Origin: Podarcis muralis
Taxonomy: Eukaryota
Assembly (NCBI RefSeq): GCF_964188315.1
Contig: NC_135661.1
Span: 81,778,001-81,842,000 of the forward strand
DNA: 64,000 bases
Direction of reading: 5' to 3'
Positions 330 to 39,166 of this stretch are shown piece by piece. The notes under the pieces are model-generated. The model was not told the DNA's origin and searched no databases. It saw nothing but the letters and a program-made list of their open reading frames with translations. The number at the start of each line of letters is the position of its first letter. The first letter of the stretch is position 1. Made by a program: the position numbers and the translations under genes.

Positions 330-377
330 TTATCTCTTTATCTCTTCGTAGACGGAAGGGCTTCTGGGCTGCAAGGT
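330..377 (-). CDS. Gene A exon 7 (cyt3) TLQPRSPSVYEEIKR*
   Basis: Acceptor TTTTCTCTTTAG|; completes the ITAM; TAA at 332-330. Confidence 0.85.
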   Translation of the reverse strand, partial: TLQPRSPSVYEEIKR

Positions 378-3300
378 CTAAAGAGAAAATGGAGATGGTC
401 AGGTGGAAGCCACAGAGTCAAATCCATCTTTGCTTTCATTTGTTTTCCTGGCCAGCGTAAGAATACATTTATATTCTTGGAATGGGACGCGGGTGGCGCT
501 GTGGGTTAAACCACAGAGCCTAGGACTTGCCAATCAGAAGGTCGGAAGTTCGAATCCCCGTGACGGGGTGAGCTCCCGTTGCTCGGTCCCTGCTCCTGGC
601 AACCTAGCAGTTCGAAAGCATGTCAAAGTGCAAGTAGATAAATAGATACCACTCCGGCGGGAAGGTAAACGGCGTTTCCGTGCACTGCTCTGGTTGCAAG
701 AAGCGGCTTAGTCATGCTGGCCACATGACCCGGAAGCTGTATGCAGGCTCCCTCGGCCAATATGAGGGAGATGAGTGCCGCAACCCCAGAGTCGGCCGCG
801 ACTGGACTTAATGGTCAGGGGTCCCTTTTTATTCTTGGAAGCAGCACAACTTGTAAGAAGAGAAGGAAATCAGAGCAAGTATCTTGAAGGCTTAAGGTCT
901 ATACTTTCAGGGAACTTGGGCGTCCTCTGCCTGGAATTTGGATAATTAGGAATACAGGGCATGCCACTGTGAATTTAACGCGAAGGAAGGATTTCAGGTC
1001 CAGTTCCCGAAGGGCTTCTTTTGCAGTGTGAGCAGAGAAAAGCTTCATTTGCTGAAACACCCATTTCCACCTGACTCTACAACCCTTCAGGAGACTTGCA
1101 CACCTTTGCATCTGGCCATCTAGGTGTATACATTTCTGTTCTGGAGGGAGAAATCCCTGCTTGAAATCTGGGAGAGCAGCTACCATTCAATGTAGGCTTT
1201 ACTCGGCTTGAGAGATTAAAGGGGTGACTTGGTATTCGGCCACTTTCTGTGTTCTGTTGGGTAGGTACATGAGGAAGACAATTGCCCATCAGGCCCTAAA
1301 ATGTACGAGGCCATCTTAAGGCCAGCTTTCTGAGTTGTGTCTGTAACCCTGGGTGTGAGAGCCGCTGGTCGGCTCTTGTTAATACAGTGGTACCTTGGTT
1401 CTCAAACCAAAGTCTGTTCCCAAACCAAAGCGTTCCAAAACAAAGGCACGCTTTCCCATAGTAAGTAATGCAAAATGGATTAAGACATTCCAGACTTTAC
1501 AAACAACCCCATTAAACAACAATTTAACATGAATTTTACTATCTAACGAGACCATTGATCCATAAAATGAAAGCAATGAACAATGCACTACAGTCACATA
1601 ATCAGTAGCTGAACTGTGTTCCACAGTCACCAAAACAAAACAAAAGAGCCGCAAAATTAAAAACGCAAAATAAATAGTAAAAACAGACAGACCTCAGCAT
1701 AACACTCAAAACGGAAGTGTGGCACTCAAATCAGAAGTGTAACACTCAAAACGGAGCATATTTGGCTTCCGAAAAACATTCGTAAACCAGAACACTTACT
1801 TCTGGGTTTGCAGTGTTTGGGTTCCAACTTGCTTGAGTACCAAGGCGTTTGAGAACCAAGGCACCACTGTAACAGATATTTTGTCATATTTGGCATTTCC
1901 AAACATTCTGAAGCACAAAGGACTCACCTCATATGTGTTGGCAGCGCTGGAGGAATTTTCAGGATGAACCTGGGTCAACGACAAAAATATGTTGAAGGTA
2001 GCACTTTACTGTAGCCCTGATGCCGAGTTCTTGCAGTGTGTCAGTGCAGAATTCTGAGAATTCTATTTTGATTATTATGGCCAGTTTCAAATCTGTGGCC
2101 AGCTGAACTTGGCCAGTTCCATTTTCTTAAGACCCACATTTAGGGGCACCTTAGCAGACGCTGAAACAGGGAGTGTTTTTCTGAAAACAAAAAGTTCTGT
2201 TTTTTGTTTTGTTTTTTAAACCCACTTTTCTTTCGCATCTTTGTGACTTAATTTGTCATTCCTTTCTGTGCTCCGCTGTTTAAATCCTCTGGATCATGGA
2301 AATGGCACCGCTCATCTGCTCTCAAGGTCAGCTAAGTTAGCACTGAAGCAAAAAATAAATGTTAAACAGCATGCAAAAGCGGGAAAAGCTTGAGGGTGCC
2401 TCTTAACCCACAATACTTAGTACTCTAAATAGGTCAAATCATGTTTTTTCACATGGCCAGAGACCTGGTGCCAAATTCAACTGCAGTCACTAATAATAAT
2501 AATAATAAACCGCTCATCTGCTCTCAAGGTCAGCTAAGTTAGCACTGACGTAAAAAATAAATGTTAAACAGCATGCTATTGTGGGCAATAGGGTTTTTTT
2601 TTTTTAAAAAAAACTTATTGAATTTCCCCTGAAAAGAGGAAACCCAGCTCAAAGGGGTCTGGGGTGGAGATGGCATGGCATTTAGATGCTGTTGGTGGCT
2701 GGTGGATGCCATGCTTGAGGTGGCCCCATCTCACCCCAAACGACCATCTGGAGGCCCCCTGAGTCACTCACCTGTCCAGCTGGAAGAACGTTCTCATATA
2801 TTTGAGGGGTGGATACAACCTGGGTGGAAGTTTTGCCATTTCGACGACAGACACCTGGAGGAGGGAGAAGTCTGGGAATAAACTCGTAATGTGGACCTCA
2901 TATCCTACAACAGACCTTACAAATCTACCCCCGAGAGCAGGGTAGCATCAAGCAAACTGCAGCAAGACCATTTCTTGATGCTTTTTAAGAAGCATTTGTT
3001 TGAGTCTTGTCGTTAGCAAGAAGGAGAACTGAAGGTTATTGATATTGATTGATTGCGTCCTATCCCACCCTGTTCTCCAAGGAGCTCAGGGTGGTCCACA
3101 CAGTTCTGCTGCTCTGCATTTCAGCCTCACAACAACCCTGTGAGGTAGGTTAGGCTGAGAAGCAACAACTGTTCCAAGGTCCTTTGTGGCCAAGTGGGGA
3201 TTCAAACCCTGGTCTCCAGGTTCCCAGTATGACACTCTATCCATGACACCGTTTCTTACACCAGTGTGCTGTAGTGGTTAAGAGTGGTGGACTCGTAATC

Positions 3301-5170
3301 TGGTGAACCGGGTTTGCTTCCCCGCTCCTCCGCATGCAGCTGCTGGGTGACCTTGGGCCAGTCACACTTCTCTGAAGTCTCTCAGCCTCACTCACCTCAC
3401 AGAGTGTTTGTTGTGGGGGAGGAAGGGAAAAGGAGATTGTTAGCCGCTTTGAGACTCCTTCGGGTAGTGATAAAGCGGGATATCAAATCCAAACTCTTCT
3501 TACACAGGCACACATGCTAGTCCCCCAACAGCTTACAGCCTAAAGGAGGTGACTCATTTAAATGTCAGTGCACTATGCCAATCATTTGGGGTTCCTTTTC
3601 CAGTCAGCAGAGTCACCCAGAAAGTCTTCTTGGAGTTCAGCTCATGTGTTGGTGAATTCCCACGTGGGAATAAACACCTCACCCATTTCACTTCAGCTTA
3701 TTGCAGAATTAAAATTGCAATTTATAAAACTATTGGTCTAAGGGAAATAAAGTAAAACTATATACAGCGAATCATCTCTCCTCTCTTCACTAGAGTGTGT
3801 GAGTTGGGACCATTGGTGTAGTAGGAGATTAGCAGCTCAACTTAACGATGCTAGTTGGCATGAGAAGGGGTTAAGACCACAGAGCTGTATTCCTGATAGG
3901 CAGACCATAGAGATGTACTTGGGAGAGAGGGCTCTGTGTGATTTCATTTCCCCACCTCCCCACCCCTCTTCCTTCAACCAGCAATGAGGGCTCCGCTTGC
4001 TCCAGCTCGTACACATGTCTGAGGCTGTTTTTACTGTAAATATAAGTATTTTACCTGCATAGTTTGTTTACTGCTGCTGTTGCAGAGAACCGATGCATGA
4101 CTATAGGTAAGTAAATCATATTTTAAACTTACTTCCAAGTCTGTTGCCTGATTCTTTGTCAAGAAAGGTAAGCAAGGGGGACACAGCTTACGTTGTAGCT
4201 GGGCTTTATCCAAAGAAGGCTTCACAATTCTTATGCTTTAATTTTCTGCTAAGGATGGGATCTTAAACTCTGTTCAGCTTGTGCAAGTGGGTGCCTGGAG
4301 GTAAGGTAAAGGTAAAGGGACCCCTGACCATTAGGTCCAGTCGCGGATGACTCTGGGGTTGCAGTGCTCATCTCGCTTTATTGGCCGAGGGAGCCGGCGT
4401 AAAGGTTCCGGGTCATGTGGCCAGCATGACTAAGCCGCTTCTGGCGAACCAGAGCAGCGCACGGAAACGCTGTTTACCTTCCCGCCGGAGCGGTACCTAT
4501 TTATCTATTTGCACTTTGATGTGCTTGTGAACTGCTATGTTGGCAGGAGCAGGGACCGAGCAACGGGAGCTCATCCTGTTGCGGGGATTCGAACTGCCAC
4601 CCTTCAGATTGGCAAGCCCTAGGCTCTGTGGTTTAACCCACAGCGCCACCCGCGTCCCTGCCTGGAGGTATAAATTGCAATTCATATATCCTCTCCTAAC
4701 TAGTAAAACTCATCCCACAGTTGATAGCACCATGTTGAGAGCATCCTGCAGTCCACGGCCAGCTCTGGTTTTACTCACGGAGAAAGATGTAAGTCAGTGT
4801 TCCCACTAGCACCAATATCACAGCCAGGGACCCGATAACAGTCCCAGCGAGGACTCCAGCAGAACCAGAAGAGGAAGAAGAAGAACCATCTGAAGAATCT
4901 GAAGAGCAAAGGACTTTTTATCCAAGATTTTGCATTAAATGTTGACCATAATCTAGCCTCTCATCTCTCCCTCTAAAAGCACTAAAGGAAGGAAAGTCAA
5001 TATTTTAGAATTACCCGGCTTTGGGGGCAGAGAGGCAGCAGCATGTAATGTCCAGAAATGGATGCAGCTCTTCCTGGCTCACATAAGGTTGGCTAGAAAA
5101 TAAGCCAAGGTGTTGCTCTCCAAAAGGTGAGAAATAGTTCTTCCCCAAACTCAGTGCCCAGTCTAGTGAT

Positions 5171-5229
<59 letters not shown>

Positions 5230-8200
5230 GAATGTTTTTTATTAAAGATTTTCTTGGTTTATGAAAGAACATGCATTGTCTCTTTTTTCACGTTGTAGAG
5301 TCTTTTTTATCACCTGATGTGAGACACTGGTGCTGCACAAAACCCAACATACACCCTACATATTACCACCCAACCCCCTCTCCCCACCTCCTTCTTCCCC
5401 AGTCTAGCGATATTCTTTGATCCTTCCAGCTCCACCAAGCTTTTCTCCCACACTCAGCTATGTGGGCCGCATAACAAGCTATTGTTACGATAGGCCCTTT
5501 GAGCATTGAAAACAGCTGTCCCATACGTGTCAACATTTCTCTGATGAAACATCGTAATCTACCTCCACACATAAAGCGATAGGGAGTTAGAAACCACTAG
5601 CGTGGAGAGCAGAGTCAGGAGGAAAGGTGTTCCTGGTTTATTAGTGGATTACTCACATGCCATAGTTATCTTACTGGGGTTGCTTGTAGCATTACTGACA
5701 GGGTTGACTGCCTGACACATATAGATCCCTTCATCCTCTTTGGCGATGCCAGTTAACATGAGGGTTCGGTTCCAGTCAGAAAGCCCAGTATTAGATGGGA
5801 CAGGATTACCATCCTTGAACCAAAGGATGGAGACGTCAAAGTGGTCAGAGGTGTTGCAGTGTAAGGTGACAGTTGTGTTCTCTGCCACTAGGGATTCTGT
5901 CGGCCGCAGGACCGGGTTGGAGAGGATTTCTGCAGACAAAACAGAAAGACAGTCATCATTTGTGTGTCCTCATGGTCACTGAATCTGGTTATAGTCTCTT
6001 TAAGAGAAGCCATCAAAGAAAGCCACTTTGAGCCACTGACATGTGTTGTTGTTGTTGTTTAGTCGTTTAGTTTTGTCCGACTCTTCGTGACCCCATGGAC
6101 CAGAGCACGCCAGGCACTCCTGTTTTCCACTGCCTCCTGCAGTTTGGTCAAACTCATGCTGGTCGCTTCGAGAACACTGTCCAACCATCTCATCCTCTGT
6201 CGTCCCCTTCTCCTTGTGCCCTCCATCTTTCCCAGCATCAGGGTCTTTTCCAGGGAGTCTTCTCTTCTCATGAGGTGGCCAAAGTATTGGCGCCTCAGCT
6301 TCAGGATCTGTCCTTCCAGTGAGCACTCAGGGCTGTTTTCCTTCAGAATGGATAGGTTTGATCTTCTTGCAGTCCATGGGACTCTCAAGAGTCTCCTCCA
6401 ACACCATATGTTGGTGCATATTAATTGGTTTAAAAATGCTTTTAAATGAATATAATTCCCCCTCCCCCCAAAAAACCCCTCAAACATTTCCCCATTGAAA
6501 AGCTAAAAAGGCAGTTGCAAGACTAGCATATTCTGATATAGTTTTCTGGTGAAAAAATGAATAATTTTGTAGGGCCTCATTCTTGGGGCAGAGGAATTGT
6601 GTTTAGGACAAATTAATGAGCCCCCCCACCAAGGGGGAAGGCACAGAACTCTCCACCTCAGAGCTCAGCAGAGGAGATAGATTTGGGTGCATAAGAAGTA
6701 AGAATGACTGGAGAGCAAGTTAACATACCTGAAACGGTGATGTTTGTATCCCCTGTGTTGGTAACCCCAGGACCTTCTGGTTTAAATGTATAGATTCCAG
6801 AGTCATCTGGCTTTAAATCTGTGATGTAAAGGGAGCAATCTGGCTTCACAGTTTCCCTGCCAGTGTAGGCAGGTCCCCCGATCTGACCACTATATGGAGG
6901 TCTGAAAAATGAAATAATTATGTTTCTTTCTTCAACTGCCCCTCTGTACCATTTGCAGCTGCCAACATTCTTCAGATCAAGACCTTCTGGTGTTAAGGTG
7001 ACACTATCTCCTTCTTTCAGCACTTCTGGAACAACTCTGATACTTATTCCAGTTGTCTCCTGGGCTCGAGTCAACAGGAAGCAGGAACTCAGGACGGAGG
7101 CTGCAGTGTGGAGAAGGAAACGAAAGACATGTTCTGCTAAAGAAGAAGAAAAAAGGCTTCCAACCTCTGCTGAAATGTCACGGCACACTCTAAATATCCC
7201 AGTTCCTAACAGTGTTTCCGCCCAAGAGCTGTCCTGCAAACACCAAGTGTAGCCCTTACTTTATTGAGCAAGCAAGAAGGCAGTTCTTTTCCTGGCAGCT
7301 CAGCCTCAGCCTTCTTCCGGGGCAGACATGAAGAAAGGGGAAGCGCTCTTGCATTTCCCCTTCCAGGACCCTCCCATGTTTCTAGCTAAGCAAACATTAA
7401 CATAAAGGGGTCCAGTGAAGGAGGTCTGGGCATCTGTCTGTGTTTACCTCCTTCAGGGACTGAGGATGATTCCTTTCTTTTCTTTATAATTTTTCATTTT
7501 TAACAAATGAACATAATAATCTGATTTATAAATCCTTTATGTGCTTTCACCATACCACAAATACACATGCCAGCCAAATGTATTATCATGACATTCCAAG
7601 TCTTTAATATGTGGATTCTTCAGTGACAACCATTCCTTCAACCAGCACAGACAGGAAGCTTCATAATATAATCTCATATCCGACAGGGAGAAACCTCTTC
7701 TCTCTTTCTCATCTATCAATATTTTATATTTTACTCTTGGTTTTTTCCCTTTTTTCCCTTGCCAGGTACCTTTTCGCCATTTATTTCAATAATTTCAATC
7801 TGTCTTGCCGGTATTGATTGAAACAAAAATAACATTCATTTTAATAAATGATTCCTTTCTTCACACAAAGTGCTCACTGGGCACTAAGAATCCTTCTACG
7901 ATTTTTCTTTTTAAAAAAATTCCCCCAGGGATCCAGCCTGCTCCTTAAGTACTACCTCTCTACCTCCTCCAGAGCTGCTTGTCTAGAAGGGTCTGAGGCA
8001 TTGTCAAAGTCATCATGTAACCATACCCTCCAACATTTCTCCAATGAATATGGGGACATCCAAAGGAAAAGCAGGATATGCCAGGCTCAAATCAGAAACT
8101 GGCTTCTGTAAATCGGAGACTGTATCTGGAAAACAGGGACACCTGGAGGGTCTATATGTAACTCCATCTGCAGTCTTTCAGAACACTTACCAGAAACCCC

Positions 8201-9218
8201 TGTGGAAATGGGGGCCTGATTCTGCGTCCAAGTAGGCAGGAAACAGAGGGTGAAGAGGTGCGGCCCTTAGTGGGACTTGCCAATTTTGCATTTCAATGCA
8301 AGTTTAAGTACATATTTAAAATGCATTTTCTTGCAAATTAACACAATGGTCTAGTTTGAATTCCTGAGAAGGACACCACAACATGGAGGAGCATGAAATC
8401 TGGTAGTGAGTGAGGTTTAGACCTCTGCATTAGTCTGAGAGCTGCAGATCTATATTAGAACTAAAAGACCAAATTCCTCCAGCATCCCCATCCTACCCCC
8501 CAAGCTCAGCTGCATGTAACTCCAACTGCTTCCCTCCAGTGCTCTTACCAGCAACCCCTTTGGAAATGGGGTCCGGAGTCTGCATCCTAGTAAGTAGGAA
8601 ACCAAGGGTGTAACAGGGTGGTCCCTAGCATATAAATACATGTTTTAAAAGTTATTTTCATTCAAAACAACACCTTCCTCTAATTTGAATTCTTGAGAAC
8701 TGCACCACAACATTTGGAGAAGTATGAAATCGGGTGCAGAGTTAGGTTTCGACATCTGCATTAGTGGGAGAGATACTGTTGTTTAGTCATTTAGTCGTGC
8801 CCGACTCTTCGTTACCCCATGGACCAGGGCATGCCAGGCACTCCTGTCTTCCACTGCCTCCCGCAGTTTGGTCAAACTCATGCTGGTAGCTTCGAGAACA
8901 CTGTCCAACCATCTCGTCCTCTGTTGTCCCCTTCTCCATGTGCCCTCCATCTTTCCCAACATCAGGGTCTTTTCCAGGGAGTCTTCTCTTCTCTTAAGGG
9001 GATGGCCAAAGTATTGGAGCCTCAGCTTCACGTTCTGTCCTTCCAGTGAGCACTCAGGCTGGGAGAGATACATATCTGTGCTAAAAGACCAAATTCCTCC
9101 AGCATCCTCAACTCCCCCCAAGTAAGTCCTCCCCATTGCAGGGTGCTGATCTCTCACCTGCTAAGGGCAGCATCTTCCAGGAGACCTTCCAGCCATGGGA
9201 TCTGCGTGGCCTGTCCAT
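330..9218 (-). CDS. Gene A: CEACAM-like ITAM receptor, 7 exons (L-N-A-TM-cyt1-cyt2-cyt3), 332 aa
   Basis: Exons 9158-9218, 6729-7100, 5657-5929, 4779-4898, 2772-2854, 1928-1969, 330-377; all GT-AG, phases 1,1,1,1,0,0; 999 nt open frame ending TAA. CEACAM hallmarks: leader split as MLPLA|ASVLSSCF, IgV without B-F disulfide, IgC with LSDWNRTL and CQAVNPVS. Confidence 0.88.
484..829 (+). mobile_element. Sauria (Squam1) SINE, present only in duplicate copy 1
   Basis: GGGACGCGGGTGGCGCTGTGGGTTAAACC head; TSD ATTCTTGGAA; empty site in copy 2 (~11720). Confidence 0.9.
1385..1869. mobile_element. TcMar/Tigger-like MITE (duplicate at 12483-12933)
   Basis: TA|CAGTGGTACCTTGGTTCTC...GAGAACCAAGGCACCACTG|TA. 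Confidence 0.85.
1928..1969 (-). CDS. Gene A exon 6 (cyt2) VHPENSSSAANTYE
   Basis: Acceptor GACCCAG|, donor GAG|GTGAGT; 42 nt, phase 0-0. Confidence 0.85.
2772..2854 (-). CDS. Gene A exon 5 (cyt1) RVCRRNGKTSTQVVSTPQIYENVLPAGQ
   Basis: Acceptor CCTCCTCCAG|, donor CAG|GTGAGT; basic stop-transfer residues; 83 nt. Confidence 0.87.
3260..3500 (+). mobile_element. tRNA-derived SINE (Squam2-like); duplicate at ~14620-14850
   Basis: TGTAGTGGTTAAGAG A-box head, GCTGGGTGACCTTGGGCCAGTCAC core, (CTT)n tail. Family name tentative. Confidence 0.75.
4300..4658 (-). mobile_element. Sauria SINE (duplicate at ~15673-16026)
   Basis: Full head and (ACCTTT)n tail; TSD TGCCTGGAG. Confidence 0.9.
4779..4898 (-). 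CDS. Gene A exon 4 (Ser-rich stalk + TM)
   Basis: Acceptor CTCTTCAG|AT, donor C|GTGAGT, 120 nt; YSSDGSSSSSSGSAGVLAGTVIGSLAVILVLVGTLTYIFL. Confidence 0.9.
5170..5230. repeat. (TTTC)n microsatellite (longer paralog at ~16540-16620)
   Basis: Direct reading. Confidence 0.95.
5657..5929 (-). CDS. Gene A exon 3 (IgC, A-type domain)
   Basis: Acceptor TCTGCAG|AA, donor T|GTGAGT, 273 nt; VTLHC...LWFKDG...EDEGIYMC. Confidence 0.93.
6043..6405 (-). mobile_element. Bov-B LINE 3' fragment (shared with duplicate at ~17375-17730)
   Basis: WCWRRLLRVPWTARRSNLSIL...HGVTKSR; (CAA)n tail. Confidence 0.9.
6729..7100 (-). CDS. Gene A exon 2 (signal end + IgV N domain)
   Basis: Acceptor CACACTGCAG|CC, donor CAG|GTATG, 372 nt; ...CKWYRG...YTGRETVKPDCSLYITDLKPDDSGIYT. 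Confidence 0.93.
8778..9060 (-). mobile_element. Bov-B LINE 3' fragment (shared with duplicate at ~20122-20405)
   Basis: ECSLEGQ.LKLRLQYFGH...REDSLEKTLMLGK. Confidence 0.88.
9158..9218 (-). CDS. Gene A exon 1 (leader) MDRPRRSHGWKVSWKMLPLA
   Basis: Strong Kozak ACAAGATGG; 61 nt; donor GCAG|GTGAGA, phase 1. Confidence 0.85.
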
Positions 9219-11563: not shown

Positions 11564-11611
11564 TTATCTCTTTATCTCTTCGTAGACAGAAGGGCTTCTG
11601 GGCTGCAAGGT
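11564..11611 (-). CDS. Gene B exon 7 (cyt3) TLQPRSPSVYEEIKR*
   Basis: Same acceptor and stop as gene A exon 7. Confidence 0.85.
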   Translation of the reverse strand, partial: TLQPRSPSVYEEIKR

Positions 11612-14600
11612 CTAAAGAGAAAATGGAGATGGTCAGGTGGAAGCCACAGAGTCAGATCCATCTTTGCTTTTATTTGTCTTCCTGGCCAGTGTAAGAATAC
11701 ATTTATTTACGTATTTATATTCTTTGAAGCAGCACGGCTTGTAAGAAGAAAAGGAAATCAGAGTAAGTGTCTTTAAGACAAGTGGTTTATACTTTCAGGG
11801 AACCTGGGCATCCTCTGCCTGGAATTTGGATAATTCGGAATACAGGGCATGCCACTGTGATTTCAATGCGAAGGAGGAATTTCAGGTCCAGTTCCCTCAG
11901 GGCTTCTTTTGCAGTGTGAGCAGAGAAAAGCTTCACTTGCTGAAACACCCATTTCCACCTGACTCTACAACATAGCTGTCAACCTTCCCCCACCCCTTTT
12001 TTGCGGGAAATTCCCTTATTCCAGCACTGTTTCTCGCTGCTTCCTGCTGCTATCCCAGAATGTTAGATATCCCGTAGACTGTCCCTGGAACAATTGACGC
12101 TGCTGATCCCTTATTTTCGAGGCTGCTGATCCCTTCTTTTCAAATCTGAAAGTTGACAGCTATGCTCTACAACCCTTCAGGAGACTTGCACACCTTTGCA
12201 GCTGGCCATCTAGGTGTACATACATTTCTGTTCTGGAGGGAGAGATCCATGCTTGAAATCTGGGAGAGCAGCTGCCATTCAATGTAGGCTTTACTCGGCT
12301 TGATAGACTAAAGGGGGTGTCTTGGTATTCGGCCACTTTCTATGTTCTGTTGGGTAGGTACATGAGGAAGACAATTGCCCATAAGGCCCTAAAATGTACA
12401 AGGCCATCTTAAGGCCAGCTTTCTGAGTTGTGTCTGTAACCCTGGGTTAATTGTGAGAGCTGCTGGTCGGCTCTTGTTAATACAGTGGTACATTGGTTCT
12501 CAAACTTAATCCATTTCGGAAATCTGTTCCCAAACCAAAGCATTCCAAAACCAAGGCATGCAAAATGGATTAAGACGTTCCAGACTTTTAAAAACAACCC
12601 CCTTAAACAGCAATTTAACATGAATTTTACTATCTAATGAGACCATTGATCCATAAAATGAAAGCAATGAACAATGCACTGCAGTCACATCATCAATCAA
12701 TCAGTAGCTGAACTGCATTCCACAGTCACAAAAAGAAAACAAAAGAGCTGCAAAATCCAAAACGCAAAATAAATAGCAAAAACTAACAAATGTCAGCGTA
12801 ACACTCAAAATGGAAGTGTGGCACTCAAATTAGAAGTGTAACACTCAAAACGGAGCATATTACTTCTGGGTTTGCAGTGTTTGGGTTCCAAGTTGCTTGA
12901 GTACCAAGGTGTTTGAGAACCAAGGGACCACTGTAACAGATATTTTGTCATATTTGGCATTTCCAAACATTCTGAAGCACAAAGGACTCACCTCATATGT
13001 GTTGACAGCGCTGGAGGAATTTTCAGGATGAACCTGGGTCAACGACAAAAATATGTTAACCTGCCCTTTCCATTCACATGGTTTGCTGCAAGAGAAAGGA
13101 AAATTTCCCAGCTTCATGGGAAAGGAAGATTTTAAGTGGCCGCAGATCAGTAGTGGGTGGAGCCAGATGTAAAAATGGGTGGAGCGAGAAATGCAAATTT
13201 CACCTTTGTGCAGTAGGCTAGTTTCTACACAGCTCCCTCTCTACACCTTCATCCAAGCAAGGCTGAGACTTTCAAAGACATATTCCAGCCAGGCAAAACA
13301 CTCAGGCAAGGTGTGAAGCCAGTTTGGTGGTGGACCTGACCTGAGAAGGAGTGTGTCGTGTGGAAAGACTGAGCGACAGGCAAAGTGATATTTAACCCCC
13401 AGAACTCAGTTTTCCTACTCCTTGTCTACCAGGTAAGTGCTTTAAAATTGAGAGGATCGGCTCCATTCTATACCCATATTGGCAATAAACAACAGCATAA
13501 GAAAAGTAGTTTGATGGCAGCCTTCCTCGCAAGGTTATCATCTTTCTTCCAACAGAGCCTGGTTATAATTGACCCTCCGTTAGAAGGAAGAGGATTGGTT
13601 TGAGAAGATATTGAATTATTTGAGTAGGTTTGAACAATTTGGGGCAATTAAAATGTTAAAAGTTAAATAAACCTTGTGGAGGGAGGAGTGTTAAGGTATA
13701 TAGAATTGTACATATGGCTGATTTGAATATGTTATTATTGATTATTTATACCCAATGCATCAGCCGCCTGGGGGTTTCCACTGTGTTTTGGTTGTTGGTA
13801 AAAACCCCCACAAAAAACTGAAAATTAAAATAAAATAAAATAATTGACCCTCCGTTAATGCTCCTGGCGGAGAACTGAAGTCTGCCAGAGTTTGAAAGTT
13901 CTTCACAGTTCAGGAGGAGAAAGAAAGATGAAATATTTCTACATCAGATACCAATTTCCAATCATACCATCCCCAAATGTGTTGGAGGTTAAACAGGTCC
14001 ATAAACAGGTTGATTGTGGGCAAGAGGGGTTTTGTTTTTTTTAACTTATTGAATTTCCCCTGAAAAGAGGAAACCCAGCTCAAAGGGGTGTGGGGTGGAG
14101 ATGGCATGGCATTTAGATGCTGTTGGTGGGTGCTATGCTTGAGGTGGCCCCATCTCACCCCAAACGACCACCTGGAGGCCCCCTGAGTCACTCACCTGTC
14201 CAGTTGGAAGAACGTTCTCATATATTTGAGGGGTGGATACAACCTGGGTGGAAGTTTTGCCATTTCGACGACAGACACCTGGAGGAGGGAGAAGTCTGGG
14301 AATAAACTCGTAATGTGGACCTCATATCCTACAACAGACCCTACAAATCTGCCCCCGAGAGCAGGGTAACATCAAGCAAACTGCAGCAAAAGCATTTCTT
14401 TATGCCTTTTAAGAAGCATTTGTTTGAATCTTGTCCTTAACAAGAACGAGCTCAGGGTGGTCTACGCAGTTCTGCTGCTCTGCATTTCAGCCTCACAACA
14501 ACCCTGTGAGGTAGGTTAGACTGAGAAGCAACAACTGTTCCAAGGTCCTTTGTGGCCAGTTGGGGATTCAAACCCTGGTCTCCAGGTTCCCAGTATGACA

Positions 14601-16539
14601 CTCTAACCATGACACCGTTTCGTAGTGGTTAAGAGCGGTGGACTCGTAATCTGGTGAACCGGGTTCGATTCCCCGCTCCTCCACATGCAGCTGCTGGGTG
14701 ACCTTGGGCTAGTCACACTTATTTGAAGTCTCTCAGCCCCACTCACCTCACAGAGTGTTTGTTGTGGGGGAGGAAGGGAAAGGAGAATGTTAGCTGCTTT
14801 GAGTCTCCTTAAAGGGAGTGAAAGGCGGGATATCAAATCCAAACTCTTCTTACACAGGCACACATGCTAGGCCCCCAACAGCTTACAGCCTAAAGGAGGT
14901 GACTCATTTAAATGTCAGTGCACTATGCCAATCATTCGGGGTTCCTTTTCCAGTCAGCAGAGTCACCCAGAAAGTCTTCTCAGTTCAGCTCATGTGTTGG
15001 TGAATTCCCAAGTGGGAATAAACACCTCACCCATTTCACTTCAGCTTAAATTATTTATTGCAGAATTAAAATTGCAACTTATACAACGATTGGTCTAAGG
15101 AAAATAAAGTAAAACTATATACAGTGAATCATTCCTCCTCTCTGTTCTTCACTAGGGTGTGTGAGTTGGGACCATTGGTGTAGTAGGAGATTAGCTGTCC
15201 AACTTAACAATGCTTATTCTTGCTAGTTAGCATGGGAAGGGGTTAAGACCACAGAGCTGTATTGCTGATAGGCATAGCATAGAGATGTACATGGGAGAGA
15301 GGGTCTGTGTGATTTCATTTCCCCACCTCTCTATCCCTCTTCCTCCAACCAGCAACGAGGGCTCCGCTTGCTCCAGCTCGTACACATGTCTGAGGCTGTT
15401 TTTACTGTAAATATAAGTATTTTACCTGCATAGTTTGTTTACTGCTGCTGTTGCAGAGAACCAATGCATGACTATAGGTAAGTAAATCATATTTTAAACT
15501 TACTTCCCAGTCTGTTGCCTGATTCTTTGTCAAGAAAGGTAAGAAAGGGGGACACAACTTACGTTGTAGCTGGGCTTTATCCAAAGAAGGCTTCACAATT
15601 CTTATGCTTTAATTTTCTGCTAAGGATGGGATCTAAAACTCTGTTCAGCTTGTGCAAGTGAGTGCCTGGAGGCAAGGTAAAGATAAAGGGACCCCTGAGT
15701 ATTAGGTCCAGTCACGGATGACTCTGGGGTTGCGCCGTTCATCTCGCTTTATTGGCCGAGGGATCCAGCGTACAACTTCTGGGTCATGTGACCAGCATGA
15801 CGCAGCCACTTTTGGCGAACCAGAGCAGCGCACGGAAACTCCGTTTACCTTCCTGCCGGAGCGGTACCTATTTATTTGCACTTTGATGTGCTTTTGAACT
15901 GCTAGGTTGGCAGGAGCAGGGACCGAGCAACGGGAGCTCACCCCGTTGCGGGGATTCGAACTGCTATCCTTCTGATTGGCAAGCCCTAGGCTCTGTGGTT
16001 TAACCCACAGCGCCACCCTCGTCCCTGCCTGGAGGTATAAATTGCAATTCATATATCCTCTCCTAACTAGTAAAACTCATCCCACAGTTGAAAGCACCAT
16101 GTTGAGAGCACCCTGCAGTCGACGGCCAGCTTTGGTTTTACTCACGGAGAAAGACGTAAGTCAGTGTTCCCACTAGCACCAATATCACAGCCAGGGACCC
16201 GATAACAGTCCCAGCGAGGGCTCCAGCAGAACCAGAAGAGGAAGAAGAAGAATCAGCTGAAGAATCTGAAGAGCAAAGGACTTTTTTTCATGATTTTGCA
16301 TTAAGGGTTGACCATAATCTAGCCTCTCATCTCTCCCTCTAAAAGCACTAAAGGAAGGAAATTTAATATTTTAGAATTTTCCAGCTTTGGGGGCAGAGAG
16401 GCAGCAGCATGTAATGTCCAGAAATGGATGCAGCTCTTCCTGGCTCACATAAGATTGGCTCGAATATAAGCCAAGGCGTTGCCCTCCAAAAGGTGAGAAT
16501 AGCTCTTCCTCAAACTCAGTGCCCAGTCTAGTGATTTTC

Positions 16540-16618
<79 letters not shown>

Positions 16619-19600
16619 CTCTGAATGTTTTTAGTAAAGATTTTCTTGGTTTATGAAAGAACATGCGTTCTCTCTTTTTTCAACATACACCCTACATATT
16701 ACCACCCAACCCCCTCTCCCCACCTCCTTCTTCCCCAGTCTAGCGATATTCTTTGATCTTTCCAGCTCCCCCAAGCTCTTATCCCACACTCAGATATGTG
16801 GGCCGCATAACAAGCTATAGGCCCTTTGAGCATTGAAAACAGCTGTCCCAGACGTGCCAACATTTCTGTGATGAAACACCATAATCTACCTCCACACAAA
16901 AAGTGATAGGGAGTTAGAAACCACTAGCATGGAGAGCAGAGTCAGGAGGAAAGGTGTTCCTGGTTTATTAGTGGATTACTCACATGCTATAGTTATCTTA
17001 CTGGGGTTGCTTGTAGCATTACTGACAGGGTTGACTGCCTGACACGTATAGTTCCCTTCGTCCTCTTTGGCGATGCCCGTTATCATGAGGGTTCGGTTCT
17101 GCTCAGAAATCCCAGTCTTAGGTGGGACAGGATTACCATCCTTGAACCAAAGGATGGAGACGTCAAAGTGGTCAGAGGTGTTACAGTGTAAGGTGACAGT
17201 TGCGTTCTCTGACACTAGGGATTCTGTCGGCTGCAGGACTGGGTTGGAGAGGACTTCTGCACATGAAACAGAAAGACAGTCATCATTTGTGGGTCCTCAT
17301 GGTCACTGAATCTGGTTATGGTCTCTTTAAGAGAAGCCATCAAAGAAAACCACTTTGAGCCAGTGACATGTGGTGTTGTTATTGTTTAGTTGTTTTGTCG
17401 TGTCTGACTCTTCGTGACCCCATGGACCAGAGCACGCCAGGCACGCCTGTCTTCCACTGCCTCCCGCAGTTTGGTCAAACTCATGCTGGTAGCTTCGAGA
17501 ACACTGTCCAACCATCTCGTCCTCTGTCGTCCCCTTCTCCTTGTGCCCTCCATCTTTCCCAACATCAGGGTCTTTTCCAAGGAGTCTTCTCTTCTCATGA
17601 GGTGGCCAAAGTATTGGAGCCTCAGCTTCAGAATCTGTCCTTCCAGTGAGCACTCAGGGCTGTTTTCCTTCAGAATGGATAGGTTTGATCTTCTTGCAGT
17701 CCATGGGACTCTCAAGAGTCTCCTCCAACACCATATGTTGGTGCATATTAATTGGTTTAAAAATGCTTTTAAATGAATATAATTCCCCCTCCCCCCCCAA
17801 AAAACCCCTCAAACATTTCCCCATTGAAAAGCTAAAAAGGCAGTTGCAAGACTAGCATATTCTGATATAGTTTTCTGGTGAAAGAATGAATAATTTTGTA
17901 GGGCCTCATTCTTGGGGCAGAGGAATTGTGTTTAGGACAAATTCACGAGCCCCCCCCCCCCACCAAGGAGGAAGGCACAGAATTCTCCACCTCAGAGCTC
18001 AGCAGAGGAGATAGATTTGGGTGCATAAGAAGTAAGAATGACTGGAGAGCAAGTTAACATACCTGAAACGGTGATGTTTGTAGCCCCTGTGTTGGTAACC
18101 CCAGGACTTCCTGGTTTAAATGAATAGGTTCCAGAGTCATCTGGCTTTAAATCTGTGATGTAAAGGGAGCAATCTGGCTTCACAGTTTCCCTGCCAGTGT
18201 GGGCAGGTCCCTCGGTCTGACCACTAGGAGACAGGAAATACGTAATAATAATGTTTCTTTCTTCAGCTGCCCCTCGGTACCATTTGCAGTTACTAAGCTT
18301 CCTCAGATCAAGACCTTCTGGTGTTAAGGTGACACTCTCTCCTTCTTTCAGCACTTCTGGAACAACTCTGATACTTATTCCAGTTGTCTCCTGGGCTCGA
18401 GTCAACAGGAAGCAGGAACTCAGGACGGAGGCTGCAGTGTGGAGAAGAAAACGAAAGACATGTTCTGCTAAAGAAGAAAAAAAGGCATTTCCTGGAGCCA
18501 TCTAACCTCTGCTGAAATGTCACGGCACACTCTAAATATCCCAGTTTGTAACAGTGATTCCCCCCAAGACCTGTCCTGCAAACACCAAGTGTAGCCCTTA
18601 CTTTATTGAGCAAGCAAGAAGGCAGTTCTTTTCCTGGCAGCTCAGCCTCAGCCTTCTTCCGGGGCAGACATGAAGAAAGGGGAAGCGCTCTTGCATTTCC
18701 CCTTCCAGGACCCTCCCATGTTTCTAGCTAAGCAAACATTAACATGAAGGGGTCCAGTGAAGGAGGTCTGGGCATCTGTCTGTGTTTACCTCCTTCAGGG
18801 ACTCAGGATGATTCCTTTCTTTTCTTTCTTTGCTTTATAATTTTTCATTTTTAACAAATGAACATAATAATCTGATTTATAAATCCTTTATGTACTTTCA
18901 CCTTACCACAAATACACATGCCAGCCAAATATATTATCATGACATTCCAAGTCTTTAATATGCGGATTCTTCAGTGACAAACATTCCTTCAACCAGCACA
19001 GACAGGAAGCTTCATAATATAATCTCATATCCGACAGGGAGAAACCTCTTCTCTCTTTCTCATCTATCAATATTTTATATTTTACTCTTGGTTTTTTCCC
19101 TTGCCAGATATCTTTTTGCCATTTATTTCAATAATTTCAATCTGTCTTGCCGATCACCGGTATTGATTGAAACAAAAATAACATTCATTTTAATAAATGA
19201 TTCCTTTCTTCACACAAAGTGCTCACTGGGCATTAAGAATCCTTCTACCATTTTTTTTTATTTCCCCCAGGGATCCAGCCTGCCCCTTAAGTACTACCTC
19301 TCTACCTTCCTCCAGAGCTGCTTGTCTAGAAGGCTCTGAGGCATTGTCAAAGTCATCATGTAACCATACCCTCCAACATTTCTCCAATGAATATGGGGAC
19401 ATCCTAAGGAAAAGCAGGATATTCCAGGCTCAAATCAGAAACTGGCTTCTGTAAATTGGAGACTGTATCTGGAAAACAGGGACACCTGGAGGGTCTGTAT
19501 GTAACTCCATCTGCAGCCTTTCAGAACTCTTACCAGAAACCCCTGTGGAAATGGGGGCCTGATTCTGCGTCCAAGTAGGTAAGAAACAGAGGGTGAAGTG

Positions 19601-20564
19601 GTGCAGCCTTAGTGGGACTTGCCAATTTTGCATTTCAATGCAAGTTTAAGTACATATTTAAAATGCTTCTTCTTGCAAATTAACACAATGGTCTAGTTTG
19701 AATTCCTGAGAAGGACACCACAACAACATTTGGAGGAGCATGAAATCTGGCAGTGAGTGAGGTGTAGACCTCTGCTTTAGTCTGAGAGGTGCAGATCTAT
19801 ATTAGAACTAAAAGACCAAATTCCTCCAGCATCCTCATCCTACCCCCAAGCTCAGTTGCATATAACTCCACCTGCTTCCTTCCAGAGCTCTTACCAGCAA
19901 CCCCTTTGGAAATGGGGTCCGGAGTCTGCATCCTAGTAAGTAGGAAACCAAGGGTGTAACAGGGTGGTCCCTAGCATATAAATACATGTTTTAAAAGTTA
20001 TTTTCATTCAAAACAACACCTTCCTCTAATTTGCATTCTTGAGAACTGCACCACAACATTTGGAGAAGTATGAAATCGGGTGCAGAGTTAGGTTTCGACA
20101 TCTGCATTAGTGGGAGAGATACTGTTGTTTAGTCGTTTAGTCGTGCCCGACTCTTCGTTACCCCATGGACCAGAGCATGCCAGGCACTCCTGTCTTCCAC
20201 TGCCTCCCGCAGTTTGGTCAAACTCATGCTGGTAGCTTCGAGAACACTGTGCAACCATCTCATCCTCTGTAGTCCCCTTCTCTTTGTGCCCTCCATCTTT
20301 CCCAAGATCAAGGTCTTTTCCAGGGAGTCTTCTCTTCTCTTAAGGGGATGGCCAAAGTATTGGACCCTCAGTTTCACGATCTGTTCTTCCAGTGAGCACT
20401 CAGGCTGGGAGACATACAGATCTGTGCTAAAAGACCAAATTCCTCCAGCATCCTCAACTCCCCCCAAGTAAGTCCTCCCCATTGCAGGGTGCTGACCTCT
20501 CACCTGCTAAGGGCAGCATCTTCCAGGAGACATTCCAGTCATGGGATCTGTGTGGCCTGTCCAT
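11564..20564 (-). CDS. Gene B: tandem paralog of gene A, CEACAM-like ITAM receptor, 7 exons, 331 aa
   Basis: Exons 20504-20564, 18063-18431, 16984-17256, 16146-16265, 14196-14278, 12992-13033, 11564-11611; all splice sites and the frame intact (996 nt). Confidence 0.88.
11971..12164. mobile_element. hAT-type MITE, only in duplicate copy 2
   Basis: TIR CATAGCTGTCAAC/GTTGACAGCTATG; 8-bp TSD CTCTACAA; empty site in copy 1 (~1075). Confidence 0.88.
12992..13033 (-). CDS. Gene B exon 6 (cyt2) VHPENSSSAVNTYE
   Basis: 42 nt, phase 0-0. Confidence 0.85.
14196..14278 (-). CDS. Gene B exon 5 (cyt1, IYENV)
   Basis: 83 nt, near-identical to gene A exon 5. Confidence 0.87.
15673..16026 (-). mobile_element. 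Sauria SINE
   Basis: Orthologous to 4300-4658 in the duplicate. Confidence 0.88.
16146..16265 (-). CDS. Gene B exon 4 (stalk + TM)
   Basis: 120 nt; YSSADSSSSSSGSAGALAGTVIGSLAVILVLVGTLTYVFL. Confidence 0.9.
16984..17256 (-). CDS. Gene B exon 3 (IgC)
   Basis: 273 nt; EVLSNPVLQ...CQAVNPVSNATSNPSKITIA. Confidence 0.93.
17375..17730 (-). mobile_element. Bov-B LINE 3' fragment
   Basis: Same RT C-terminal peptide, ORF 17386-17715. Confidence 0.9.
18063..18431 (-). CDS. Gene B exon 2 (IgV N domain)
   Basis: 369 nt, one codon shorter than gene A; same splice sites. Confidence 0.93.
20122..20405 (-). mobile_element. Bov-B LINE 3' fragment
   Basis: Duplicate of 8778-9060. Confidence 0.88.
20504..20564 (-). 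CDS. Gene B exon 1 (leader) MDRPHRSHDWNVSWKMLPLA
   Basis: 61 nt; donor GCAG|GTGAGA. Confidence 0.85.
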
Positions 20565-27600: not shown

Positions 27601-30198
27601 TCAGAATTACAACAACTCAGCGGCAGATGAGGGGGAANNNNNNNNNNNNNNNNNNNNNNNNNNNNNNNNNNNNNNNNNNNNNNNNNNNNNNNNNNNNNNN
27701 NNNNNNNNNNNNNNNNNNNNNNNNNNNNNNNNNNNNNNNNNNNNNNNNNNNNNNNNNNNNNNNNNNNNNTCCCGCTTTATCACTACCCGAAGGAGTCTCA
27801 AAGCGGCTAACAATCTCCTTTCCCTTCCTCCCCCACAACAAACACTCTGTGAGGTGAGTGGGGCTGAGAGACTTCAGAGAAGTGTGACTGGCCCAAGGTC
27901 ACCCAGCAGCTGCATGTGGAGGAGCGGGGAAGCGAACCCGGTTCACCAGATTACGAGTCTACCGCTCTTAACCACTACACCACACTGGCACCAGGGGAGA
28001 GACAGCTGACAGACTCAGTGTCTTTAGAAAGCATCCCAGACCCCTCCTTTCCCAGAACCCGGCGGGCATTGAAAGTAGGAGAGCAGAGAGCTCAGAGGCA
28101 GAAGGCAAAGCTCAGCCCACCATAGTGATGATGCATAATGGGAGAGACAGAGGGGGTAGTGTTTCAATCAGAGCAACACCATTACTCCAAGAGGCTGCAT
28201 TTCTAAGCCTCTCTCTGTGAATATTGAATAAAAAAACATTGGTAAGAACTTTCCTCGTCTTATCCACTCCTGGCAACCTACCGTGTGGGGTTGGCTCCTC
28301 TGAAGCCTGACATTTATTTATTTATTTATTTAATTTTTTTAATTTTCAATGCATAATCATAACAAAAATTACAAACATTGAATCCAAAATAATACTATAC
28401 AAACAAAAAAGAACGGAACATACAAAAAAAAAAAAAAACCAAGAAAAAAGAAAAAAAGGAAACAAAACGAAACGAAACTAAACAAAAACAAAAAAGCACA
28501 CATCTACAGAAAAAAACCATATCATTACGTACTTATACACATATTGACTTCCTTCCTTTGTTCTAAGACCTCAGAAATTTTACTCTTACTATATTGTTGT
28601 GTCTGGTTAGATTACATCCATCTTTGTACTTTTTTTTTTTAACACCATTCCCCCCCCCTTTAACCCTTTAACCCTGTAAAGCATCATTCATTACATACCA
28701 ATATACTAACTCCAGAACAATGTTTTTTCATATACTCTTTAGCACAACCCCATTCTTTTAATAATTTCTGGTCCGATTGTCCCCTTATGAATGCTGTGAG
28801 TCTTGCCAGATTTATGTATTCACAAAATTTAATTTGCCAATCTTTCATTGATGTAATTTTTCTCCCTTTCCAGTTTTTTGCTATAAGCATCCTGGCAGCT
28901 GTTGTTGCATAAAGGAATACTTTCCTTTGATTGTCGGGGATATCATTTGTAATTAAACCTAAAAGGAATGCCTCCGGTTTTTTAATGACGCAGAAGGAGA
29001 GACAACTCAGGGCACATTTAAACCAGGCATGAAGGAACCTGTGGCTCCCCAGGTGATATTATTGTTATTGTTAATTATAAAATTTGGTTAGTTCCTTTAT
29101 CTTGCCCAGGGCAAAACAAAGTGACTTCCAAGCAAACAACCCCACATACCATATTGCCCCAAATATAAGCTGCACTTTCCCCCCCAAATTCTGATCGTGC
29201 AGCTGATCGTGTCTGAAAGTGCAGCTTAGATTCACGACCTCACGCCACTGGCAAAGCGGCGTGGCTTTCCCCACACCAGGAAGCAGCCCAGGAGCACGGG
29301 GCAACAGTGCCCGTCCCGTCTGCCTCCCCCAAGCTGCCAGATTTTAAAGGTGTGTCTTATATGTGGGTGCAGCTTATATACAGGCCAATATATTAAAACC
29401 AAGCAGGGAAAGACGGGGAAGAAATACATTAAAAATATTACACCTATATCTAAAAGGCTACATACAGATGGTTGAAGGCCAAATACCTGTTTATAGAAGA
29501 ATGTCCCCCGCCCCTTTCCCGGTGCCTAAAGATATATCAGGATGATGCCAGATGTTGTTCAACTCCCACTTCCTTCATTCCTGAACATTGGCAATGCTGG
29601 CTGAGGGCTGATCTGGAGGCCCACAGATTTCCTCATCCCTGACATAAAGGCATTAGAAGGGCTGGAGAACGTCATACCTGAAACCTCCATGTCCACATGG
29701 CCTGTGGTGGAAAGCATCCCACTTTCGTCCAGTGTTACTGTATAAATCCCAGAGTCCTCTGGTACTAAATTCCTGATGTGAAGGGAGCAGCCAGGACCCA
29801 TTGTCTCTCGCCTAGTGTAGGCCGCTCCCGGCACATAAAACGGAGGTGTATGGGTGAAGATCAGTTCCTCCGATTCAGCTGTCACCCCACGGTACCAGTG
29901 GCACCTTTTAAAATCTTCTAAGACAACTCCTGGTGTAAGGGTGACGCTCTGCCCTGCTACTGGATTCAGTGGTTCCACAGCGATGGAGATTTTGGTGGCG
30001 ATGGTGTCCTGGCCTTGAGTTAACAGGAAGCAAGAACTCACGATGGAGGCTGCAGTGTGGGATATAAGAGAGATTTTTCTCATCAAGCCAGAGGTGGAAA
30101 TCTTTTCCAGCTTGAGGGACACATACCTTTGTACTGTGGACTAGTGTCTACACAACTACTGCACAACCCTCTATCCTATGACAAGAGAGAAAGACACA

Positions 30199-39036: not shown

Positions 39037-39166
39037 NNNNNNNNNNNNNNNNNNNNNNNNNNNNNNNNNNNNNNNNNNNNNNNNNNNNNNNNNNNNNNNN
39101 NNNNNNNNNNNNNNNNNNNNNNNNNNNNNNNNNNNNNNNNNNNNNNNNNNNNNNNNNNNNNNNNNN
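39037..39166. other. Assembly gap (N)
   Basis: 130 N. Confidence 1.

What the first reader, a model, noticed from the sequence alone, without database searches (positions are those of the whole stretch)
330..2854. Complete ITAM assembled across two tiny exons, plus a YENV site (gene A, identical in gene B)
Seen: exon 6 ends ...NTYE in phase 0 and exon 7 starts TLQPRSPSVYEEIKR*, giving YETL-x7-YEEI; exon 5 adds IYENV. These exons are invisible in the ORF track. Known: the ITAM consensus is YxxL/I-x6-8-YxxL/I, YxN binds Grb2 SH2, and S-V-Y-E-E-I also fits the ITIM consensus (S/I/V/L)xYxx(I/L/V). Inference: a Syk-coupled, possibly phagocytic receptor with potential dual activating/inhibitory output; skipping the symmetric 42-nt exon 6 would remove the first ITAM tyrosine in frame and leave an ITIM-like motif.
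Basis: partly seen in the sequence, partly recalled or inferred. Interest (0 to 1): 0.7.

Follow-up and report, generated by a model that had tools for sequence, protein, structure and literature searches.

The report
ITAM tail of wall-lizard CEACAM gene
Three tiny exons do encode an activating (ITAM) signalling tail on a wall-lizard CEACAM immune receptor, but the gene is already annotated and this class of reptile receptor was described in a 2026 preprint, so the feature is real and already known.

Summary
On the minus strand, exons 2854-2772, 1969-1928 and 377-330 have canonical AG/GT sites and fitting phases. They encode YENV, then YETL-x7-YEEI split by a phase-0 intron after "YE", then a stop.

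With four upstream exons they reproduce NCBI protein XP_077788354.1 ("CEACAM21-like", Podarcis muralis, 332 aa) residue for residue. Gene B is an intact tandem copy. Its tail is not identical: two residues differ, both outside the motifs.

The N domain is CEACAM-type. The same three-tyrosine tail occurs in P. raffonei, Zootoca and, more diverged, Pogona.

Zimmermann & Kammerer (2026 preprint, PMC13278318) already describe reptile CEACAM1-like genes, common wall lizard included. They report ITAM tails on three exons and an upstream tyrosine motif 17-21 residues before the ITAM; here it is 21. The phase-0 split and a GRB2-type YxN motif were noted for mammalian CEACAMs in 2010 (PMC2832619).

So this is a CEACAM3/4-like putative activating or endocytic receptor. 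The exon-6-skipping and dual ITAM/ITIM ideas have no support. No annotated isoform skips exon 6, and the ITIM-like residue is not conserved in Pogona.

Neighbouring windows of this genome carry notes on the same cassette in sister genes.

The parts
9158..9218 (-). Gene A exon 1: start codon and first two thirds of the leader peptide (61 nt, ends in phase 1)
   Evidence: the translation equals the first 20 residues of P0001, and a GTGAG donor follows.
6729..7100 (-). Gene A exon 2: last third of the leader plus the IgV-like N domain (372 nt)
   Evidence: Pfam V-set. The 30 best solved-structure matches are all CEACAM N domains (CEACAM6, 1, 7, 8, 5, 3).
5657..5929 (-). Gene A exon 3: IgC2-like domain (273 nt, phase 1 to 1)
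   Evidence: Pfam Ig_3, Ig_2 and I-set. PDB matches include CEA and CEACAM1.
4779..4898 (-). Gene A exon 4: Ser-rich stalk and transmembrane helix (120 nt)
2772..2854 (-). Gene A exon 5 (cytoplasmic 1): membrane-proximal basic stretch and the YENV motif (Tyr295 of P0001)
   Evidence: The Asn at +2 is invariant in nine lizard tails.
1928..1969 (-). Gene A exon 6 (cytoplasmic 2): 42 nt ending in ..NTYE, carrying the first ITAM tyrosine (Tyr316); a phase-0 intron follows 'YE'
   Evidence: The same exon and splice sites are present in Zootoca.
330..377 (-). Gene A exon 7 (cytoplasmic 3): TL of the first YxxL, a 7-residue spacer, YEEI (Tyr327) and the stop codon
   Evidence: AATAAA signals lie 357, 433 and 547 nt past the stop, just outside the window.
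14196..14278 (-). Gene B cytoplasmic exon 1 (YENV; one A->T replacement)
12992..13033 (-). Gene B cytoplasmic exon 2 (..AVNTYE; one A->V replacement)
11564..11611 (-). Gene B cytoplasmic exon 3 (same peptide as in gene A, one synonymous change)

Best explanation
Gene A, and its intact tandem copy gene B, is a CEACAM1-related type I membrane receptor of the common wall lizard. Its layout is leader, IgV-like N domain, one IgC2 domain, transmembrane helix and a 57-residue tail carried on three small exons. That much is shown. The tail holds a YEN(V) motif, and 21 residues later a YETL-x7-YEEI motif split by a phase-0 intron; this is also shown. The rest is inferred from human CEACAM3/CEACAM4 and from ITAM receptors in general. 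Ligand or microbe clustering of the N domain would let membrane-bound Src-family kinases phosphorylate the tyrosines. The doubly phosphorylated YxxL-x7-YxxI could then bind the tandem SH2 domains of Syk. Single phosphotyrosines could bind Src-family, Vav or Nck-type SH2 domains, and pYEN could bind a Grb2-family adaptor. The outcome would be uptake and activation in a myeloid cell. An ITIM-type Podarcis protein (P0002) has an N domain 85-89% identical to gene A's. That makes gene A a candidate activating or 'decoy' partner of an inhibitory CEACAM1-type receptor; this too is inferred.
For: The exon model equals NCBI XP_077788354.1 exon by exon. The N domain aligns to CEACAM N domains, including the GRE...D.(S/T)G core and the missing canonical disulfide. 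The window holds at least six CEACAM-like N exons. The tail and all three Tyr motifs are kept in P. raffonei, in two Zootoca paralogues and in Pogona. Between A and B the tail exons show 3/173 differences, against 6.8% in non-coding DNA and about 10% in the 200-nt flanks; the N and C2 exons diverge at the non-coding rate. Podarcis against Zootoca gives 5 replacement and 6 silent changes in the tail, none in a motif. P0002 carries IQYSTL and IIYSEI behind a near-identical N domain. Literature: reptile ITAM CEACAMs with three cytoplasmic exons and an upstream Tyr motif, proposed as endocytic decoys (PMC13278318). The phase-0 split and the YxN motif (PMC2832619). CEACAM3 signalling through Src kinases, Vav, Nck and Syk (PMC7026191).
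Against: No acidic residue lies at -1 to -3 of the first ITAM tyrosine, so the motif is 'ITAM-like' by the strict definition. In human CEACAM3, Syk is dispensable for bacterial uptake (PMC7026191), so 'Syk-coupled phagocytosis' may overstate Syk's part. The preprint finds no diversifying selection on lizard CEACAM1 N domains, which weakens the pathogen-decoy story for lizards. Gene B has no separate annotated protein in the searched collection.
Confidence: 0.75

Rival explanations
1. The tyrosine motifs act mainly as YxxΦ sorting signals. Adaptor-complex binding would drive constitutive or ligand-induced endocytosis, without kinase-based activation. This is the 'endocytic motif' wording of the 2026 preprint.
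For: YENV, YETL and YEEI all fit YxxΦ. PMC13278318 calls the upstream motif endocytic. PMC2832619 leaves open whether ITAM-like CEACAM motifs are internalisation or activation signals.
Against: Sister tails keep Asn at +2 but have Asp at +3 (YEND in P0011, P0012 and P0015). That breaks YxxΦ and preserves YxN. The exact x7 spacing of the two distal motifs is kept from Lacertidae to Pogona, which sorting signals do not require.
Confidence: 0.15
2. One reading: regulated skipping of the 42-nt exon 6 removes the first ITAM tyrosine in frame. That would leave an ITIM-like SVYEEI and give the same gene activating and inhibitory isoforms.
For: The arithmetic holds: exon 6 is 42 nt, phase 0 to 0. Its acceptor has the least pyrimidine-rich tract of the three tail exons (13 of 18 pyrimidines against 15 and 16, read). 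CEACAM1 is known to toggle its ITIMs by splicing a small cytoplasmic exon (PMC13278318).
Against: None of the six annotated lacertid products lacks exon 6, and P0001's 90% cluster has one member. The exon 6 donor is GAG|GTGAGT, close to consensus, and the exon and both its sites are conserved in gene B and in Zootoca. The ITIM-defining -2 residue is Ala in Pogona.
Confidence: 0.05
3. The gene is a silent or decaying duplicate, and the motifs are inherited relics without current function.
For: No expression evidence was obtained here.
Against: All seven exons and splice sites are intact in both A and B. The tail exons are more conserved than the surrounding DNA. Replacements avoid the motifs across species.
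Confidence: 0.05

Closest known systems
Reptile CEACAM1-like (CEACAM1L) genes with ITAM or endocytic motifs, Zimmermann & Kammerer 2026 preprint (PMC13278318)
   Same: Same species set: the common wall lizard locus is analysed there. N domain plus 0-2 IgC domains, a TM helix, an ITAM tail on three cytoplasmic exons, and an extra Tyr motif 17-21 residues upstream of the ITAM (21 here). Proposed pairing with CEACAM1.
   Different: Nothing structural. I could not see the supplementary figures, so I cannot say which CEACAM1L number gene A carries. The preprint reads the upstream motif as endocytic or ITIM-like; the conservation seen here (YEN kept, +3 variable) favours a YxN reading.
Human CEACAM3 and CEACAM4 (granulocyte phagocytic receptors)
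   Same: A CEACAM N domain joined to a TM helix and a YxxL-x7-Yxx(M/I) tail whose first YxxL is split by a phase-0 intron. CEACAM3 pairs with inhibitory CEACAM1. Signalling runs through Src-family kinases with Syk recruitment (PMC7026191, PMC2832619).
   Different: The mammalian tails use four cytoplasmic exons against three here. CEACAM3 has no IgC domain and no upstream YxN, and its second motif is YxxM. CEACAM3 is primate-specific, so this is an analogue or paralogue and not an orthologue.
Marsupial CEACAM1-related ITAM genes and mammalian CEACAM20 (PMC2832619)
   Same: An ITAM combined with a conserved GRB2-type YxN motif upstream of it, and the same phase-0 split of YxxL.
   Different: There the YxN lies in cytoplasmic exon 2 of four, and the ITAM has an acidic residue before the first Tyr. 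The preprint finds no CEACAM20 in reptiles. Common ancestry of the cassettes was not tested here.
Classical ITAM receptors and adaptors (FcγRIIA, FcRγ, DAP12)
   Same: The minimal YxxL/I-x6-8-YxxL/I motif, which after double phosphorylation binds Syk or ZAP-70 tandem SH2 domains (established knowledge).
   Different: The ITAM is built into the ligand-binding chain, as in FcγRIIA, but the Ig family is unrelated. The conserved acidic residues of the extended consensus are absent.

Membership tests
CEACAM family (CEACAM1-related group) | IgV-like N domain of CEACAM type: no canonical intradomain disulfide, and a conserved G-R-E ... D-x-G-x-Y core | tested here: met
   the 30 best solved-structure matches are all CEACAM N domains (best E = 1.3e-9). 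The alignment pairs GPAYTGRET..DDSGIYT with CEACAM6 GPAYSGRET..NDTGFYT. The B- and F-strand Cys positions are not Cys.
CEACAM family (CEACAM1-related group) | Leader peptide split so that the N exon also encodes its last third, with Ig exons in phase 1 | tested here: met
   PMC13278318 states this feature for reptile CEACAMs.
CEACAM family (CEACAM1-related group) | Location in the CEACAM gene cluster, syntenic with TOMM40 and LIPE | tested here: inconclusive
   The window holds at least six CEACAM-like N exons, and more lie next to it. The flanking marker genes were not looked for.
ITAM, minimal consensus | YxxL/I-x6-8-YxxL/I in the cytoplasmic tail | tested here: met
   YETL, seven residues, YEEI at P0001 316-330. 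Kept in all orthologues and in Pogona.
ITAM, strict consensus (D/E at -1 to -3 of the first Tyr; PMC2832619) | An acidic residue just before the first tyrosine | tested here: not met
   The residues before Tyr316 are A-N-T, and the nearest Glu is at -9. By that definition the motif is 'ITAM-like'.
CEACAM-type ITAM cassette | First YxxL split by a phase-0 intron after Y-x | tested here: met
   ..TAT GAG|gtgagt ... ag|ACC TTG. Described as characteristic in PMC2832619.
ITAM (functional) | Phosphorylation-dependent binding of Syk or ZAP-70 tandem SH2 domains | not testable with these tools
   Needs biochemistry.
GRB2 SH2-binding site (pYxN) | Asn at +2 of a cytoplasmic tyrosine, conserved | tested here: met
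   YENV, YENI or YEND in nine of nine aligned lizard tails. Binding itself was not tested.
ITIM | (S/I/V/L)xYxx(I/V/L) conserved as such, and recruiting SHP-1/2 | tested here: inconclusive
   SVYEEI fits the string in lacertids, but Pogona has AVYQEI. The fit therefore looks like a by-product of the ITAM. Phosphatase binding is not testable here.
Human CEACAM3 orthologue | Single N domain, four cytoplasmic exons, YxxM second motif, primate-restricted gene | tested here: not met
   Gene A has an extra IgC2 exon, three cytoplasmic exons and YEEI. It works like CEACAM3 and CEACAM4 but is not their orthologue.

The most novel reading that the evidence does not exclude
The symmetric 42-nt exon 6 is skipped in a regulated way. 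That would turn an ITAM receptor into an isoform with only YENV and a lone C-terminal YEEI (hemITAM- or ITIM-like), making an ITAM on/off splice switch in the CEACAM family, the counterpart of the known 53-bp ITIM switch of CEACAM1.
Probability: 0.05. Interest if true: 0.45.

Novelty: already known. Interest (0 to 1): 0.15.

Why it matters
It shows that the first-stage reader can reconstruct a correct signalling tail from 42-83-nt exons with no ORF support. Biologically it adds little. The gene model is in RefSeq, and ITAM-bearing CEACAM1-like receptors of reptiles, the wall lizard included, are described as putative endocytic decoy receptors paired with CEACAM1. There is one small addition. 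Across lizard paralogues the upstream motif keeps Y-E-N while position +3 varies, even to Asp. That favours a Grb2-type docking site over the published 'endocytic YxxΦ' reading and links the reptile cassette to the marsupial and CEACAM20 YxN-plus-ITAM cassette. No reptile CEACAM has been tested functionally, so gene A and gene B are reasonable candidates for such tests.

Tried and rejected
Nothing was laid. X1-X4 are only guessed to be RNA and hold 0.21-0.22 of the sampled words. That is close to the exonic share of the query (about 17%) but is no proof of expression.

2. The protein Atlas look-up of the tail was busy both times.

3. The preprint's supplementary files are not held, so gene A's published name is unknown.

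4. The locus of the ITIM-type partner P0002 is not on record, and its N exon is not in the window or in L001.

5. Word searches restricted to the tail found only lacertid proteins. The whole-protein search was needed to reach Pogona.

6. Between Podarcis and Zootoca the tail exons are no more conserved at nucleotide level than their 60-nt flanks (12/173 against 29/360). Cross-species constraint therefore rests on the replacement/silent ratio and on the untouched motifs, not on raw identity.

7. An Fc-receptor-like (FCRL) identity, my first guess from the tail alone, was rejected once the N domain matched CEACAMs.

8. I made no joined spliced model. Exons were handled one by one by reference, and full-length comparisons used the database protein P0001.

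Full report
**What is in the sequence**

The stretch 330-2854 lies on the minus strand of a vertebrate gene. Three short exons are bounded by canonical sites:
- Exon 5 is 2854-2772, 83 nt. It sits behind a strong pyrimidine tract and AG, and its donor is CAG|GTGAGT.
- Exon 6 is 1969-1928, 42 nt, with donor GAG|GTGAGT.
- Exon 7 is 377-330, with acceptor ...ttttctctttag, and ends in TAA.

Exon 5 is entered in phase 1 and left in phase 0. Exon 6 is phase 0 to 0, and exon 7 starts in phase 0. The translations give ..QIYENVLPAGQ, then VHPENSSSAANTYE, then TLQPRSPSVYEEIKR-stop. Skipping exon 6 would stay in frame.

**The whole gene**

Upstream I located four more exons:
- a TM exon at 4898-4779;
- an IgC2 exon at 5929-5657 and an IgV exon at 7100-6729;
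- a leader exon at 9218-9158.

Pfam calls the Ig exons V-set and Ig_2/Ig_3/I-set. The 30 best solved-structure matches of the N exon are all CEACAM N domains (CEACAM6, 1, 7, 8, 5, 3), aligned through the CEACAM-typical GPAY(S/T)GRE...D(S/T)G.Y core.

A word search with the N-exon ORF returned a 332-aa NCBI protein, XP_077788354.1, "cell adhesion molecule CEACAM21-like [Podarcis muralis]" (P0001). Each of my seven exon translations is an exact substring of it, in order. The window is identical to assembly GCA_964188315.1, record OZ076960.1.

AATAAA signals lie 357-547 nt past the stop, just beyond the window start, so exon 7 is a plausible terminal exon.

**Gene B**

The A/B duplication covers about 9.5 kb at 87-96% identity. 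All seven exons of gene B are open and have canonical sites. Its tail differs from A by A->T in exon 5, A->V in exon 6 and one silent change. "Identical" therefore holds for the motifs only.

Across the A/B alignment the figures are:
- tail exons: 3 differences in 173 nt;
- non-coding DNA: 475 in 7010 (binomial P = 0.002);
- 200-nt flanks of the tail exons: 87 in 891;
- N exon 7.5% and C2 exon 6.6%, matching the non-coding rate.

So the tail is the constrained part of the gene. I found no separately annotated protein for gene B in the three word searches.

**Relatives**

The same tail, with Tyr295, Tyr316 and Tyr327 and their +1 to +3 residues unchanged, is present in P. raffonei (P0008) and in Zootoca vivipara isoforms X1-X3 and P0009.

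The Zootoca locus (L002) has the three tail exons with the same lengths and splice sites. Five replacement and six silent differences separate it from gene A, and none touches a motif. Raw nucleotide identity of these exons is no higher than that of their 60-nt flanks.

A whole-protein search added a second Zootoca paralogue (P0011, P0015), other P. muralis cluster members (P0012, P0016) and Pogona vitticeps (P0013, P0014, P0018). In a tail alignment the conserved blocks are Y-E-N, P-E-(N/S), T-Y-E-T-L-Q and V-Y-(E/Q)-E-I.

Two points discriminate between readings:
- Position +3 of the upstream motif is V, I or D while Asn +2 never changes. This favours a pYxN (Grb2-type) site over a YxxΦ sorting signal.
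- Pogona has AVYQEI, which keeps the ITAM but breaks the ITIM string. The ITIM-likeness of SVYEEI in lacertids therefore looks incidental.

**What is known**

Zimmermann & Kammerer (Research Square preprint, June 2026, PMC13278318) surveyed more than 100 reptiles, including the common wall lizard locus. They report the following:
- These tails are encoded by three exons, against four in mammals.
- Most carry one further Tyr motif 17-21 residues upstream of the proximal ITAM tyrosine (316 minus 295 is 21 here).
- The receptors have 0-2 IgC domains.
- They are proposed as decoy partners of CEACAM1.

[quoted passage not shown] They also noted a GRB2-like YxN motif upstream of the ITAM in marsupial CEACAM1-like genes and in CEACAM20. 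By their definition a motif with no D/E at -1 to -3 of the first Tyr is "ITAM-like". Gene A has A-N-T there, so "complete ITAM" is true only for the minimal consensus.

For mechanism, the CEACAM3 review (PMC7026191) documents these steps:
- Src-family kinases phosphorylate the tail.
- Vav, Nck, PI3K and Grb14 bind the proximal phosphotyrosine.
- Syk is recruited in an ITAM-dependent way. It is dispensable for uptake of gonococci but needed for large particles, the oxidative burst and NF-kB signalling.

**Likely function**

- Shown: the gene structure, the family, the motifs, their conservation and the constraint on the tail.
- Inferred: an activating or endocytic receptor of myeloid cells that signals as CEACAM3 and CEACAM4 do, with an extra Grb2-type branch.

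A UniProt Podarcis protein (P0002) has an N domain 85-89% identical to gene A's. Behind it come a TM helix and IQYSTL/IIYSEI motifs. It is a candidate inhibitory partner, but its locus could not be fetched.

**The splice-switch idea**

The arithmetic is right, and the exon 6 acceptor has the weakest pyrimidine tract of the three tail exons (13 of 18 against 15 and 16). Against the idea:
- none of the annotated lacertid products lacks exon 6;
- the annotated variants are an alternative first exon and a skipped TM exon (Zootoca X2 and X3);
- the donor is near-consensus;
- exon 6 and both its sites are conserved in gene B and in Zootoca.

The idea stays untested and unsupported.

**Limits**

They were masked in the script. 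The local scripts read the whole window file as a BLAST subject on the closed machine.
- The runs of N (27638-27769, 39037-39166, 48323-48842) were left as they are.

**Verdict**

The feature is already annotated and published as a class, so interest is low.

Noticed in passing
window 1383-1871: A roughly 490-nt element with 25-nt terminal inverted repeats (96% complementary) sits in intron 6 of gene A. It looks like a MITE-type transposon. The A/B alignment runs through it, so gene B has it too.
   Followed up: partly
window 2307-2386 and 2509-2588: An 80-nt direct repeat (91% identity) lies in intron 5. Intron 5 between 1994 and 2564 does not align with gene B.
   Followed up: no
window 480-830 (also 15702-16052 and several other places): tRNA-derived SINE copies, read by eye and visible as recurring ORF peptides. 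ARAGORN calls no tRNA in 330-2854.
   Followed up: partly
L001 1-28889 (window 19218 down to about 9.7 kb before the window start): The assembly's annotation has a gene with an 1857-residue multi-Ig product on the same strand, spanning the whole locus and running off both ends. Gene A and its downstream neighbour lie inside its range. It may be the 16-IgC CEACAM1 of the preprint or a read-through model.
   Followed up: no
window 11564-20564 (gene B): Gene B is intact in all seven exons. No separate annotated protein for it appeared in three word searches.
   Followed up: partly
L001 26098-26228 and 28568-28688 (just before the window start): The downstream neighbour, a 236-aa V-set product, has a homologous tail..PQIYENVLPPGQ.. 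and a last exon reading DLQPTTRSVYEEIKR-stop. Its middle tail exon was not found by my pattern.
   Followed up: partly
P0002 (UniProt A0A670IVM5, Podarcis muralis): An ITIM-type protein (IQYSTL, IIYSEI) whose N domain is 85-89% identical to gene A's. It is a candidate inhibitory partner. Its N exon is not in the window or in L001, and its locus is not on record.
   Followed up: partly
P0006 (Zootoca isoform X3): An annotated isoform skips the 120-nt TM exon in frame. It predicts a soluble protein that still carries the ITAM tail.
   Followed up: no
L002 5045-5286 and 15138-15346: In the Zootoca assembly the N exon of the orthologue is split into two pieces about 10 kb apart. That probably explains the odd insertion inside the N domain of model P0009.
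   Followed up: no
P0012 and P0016 (Podarcis muralis): Two other cluster members keep the YEN(D/V) motif but have no ITAM after it. P0012 may be the window's gene C with decayed ITAM exons.
   Followed up: no
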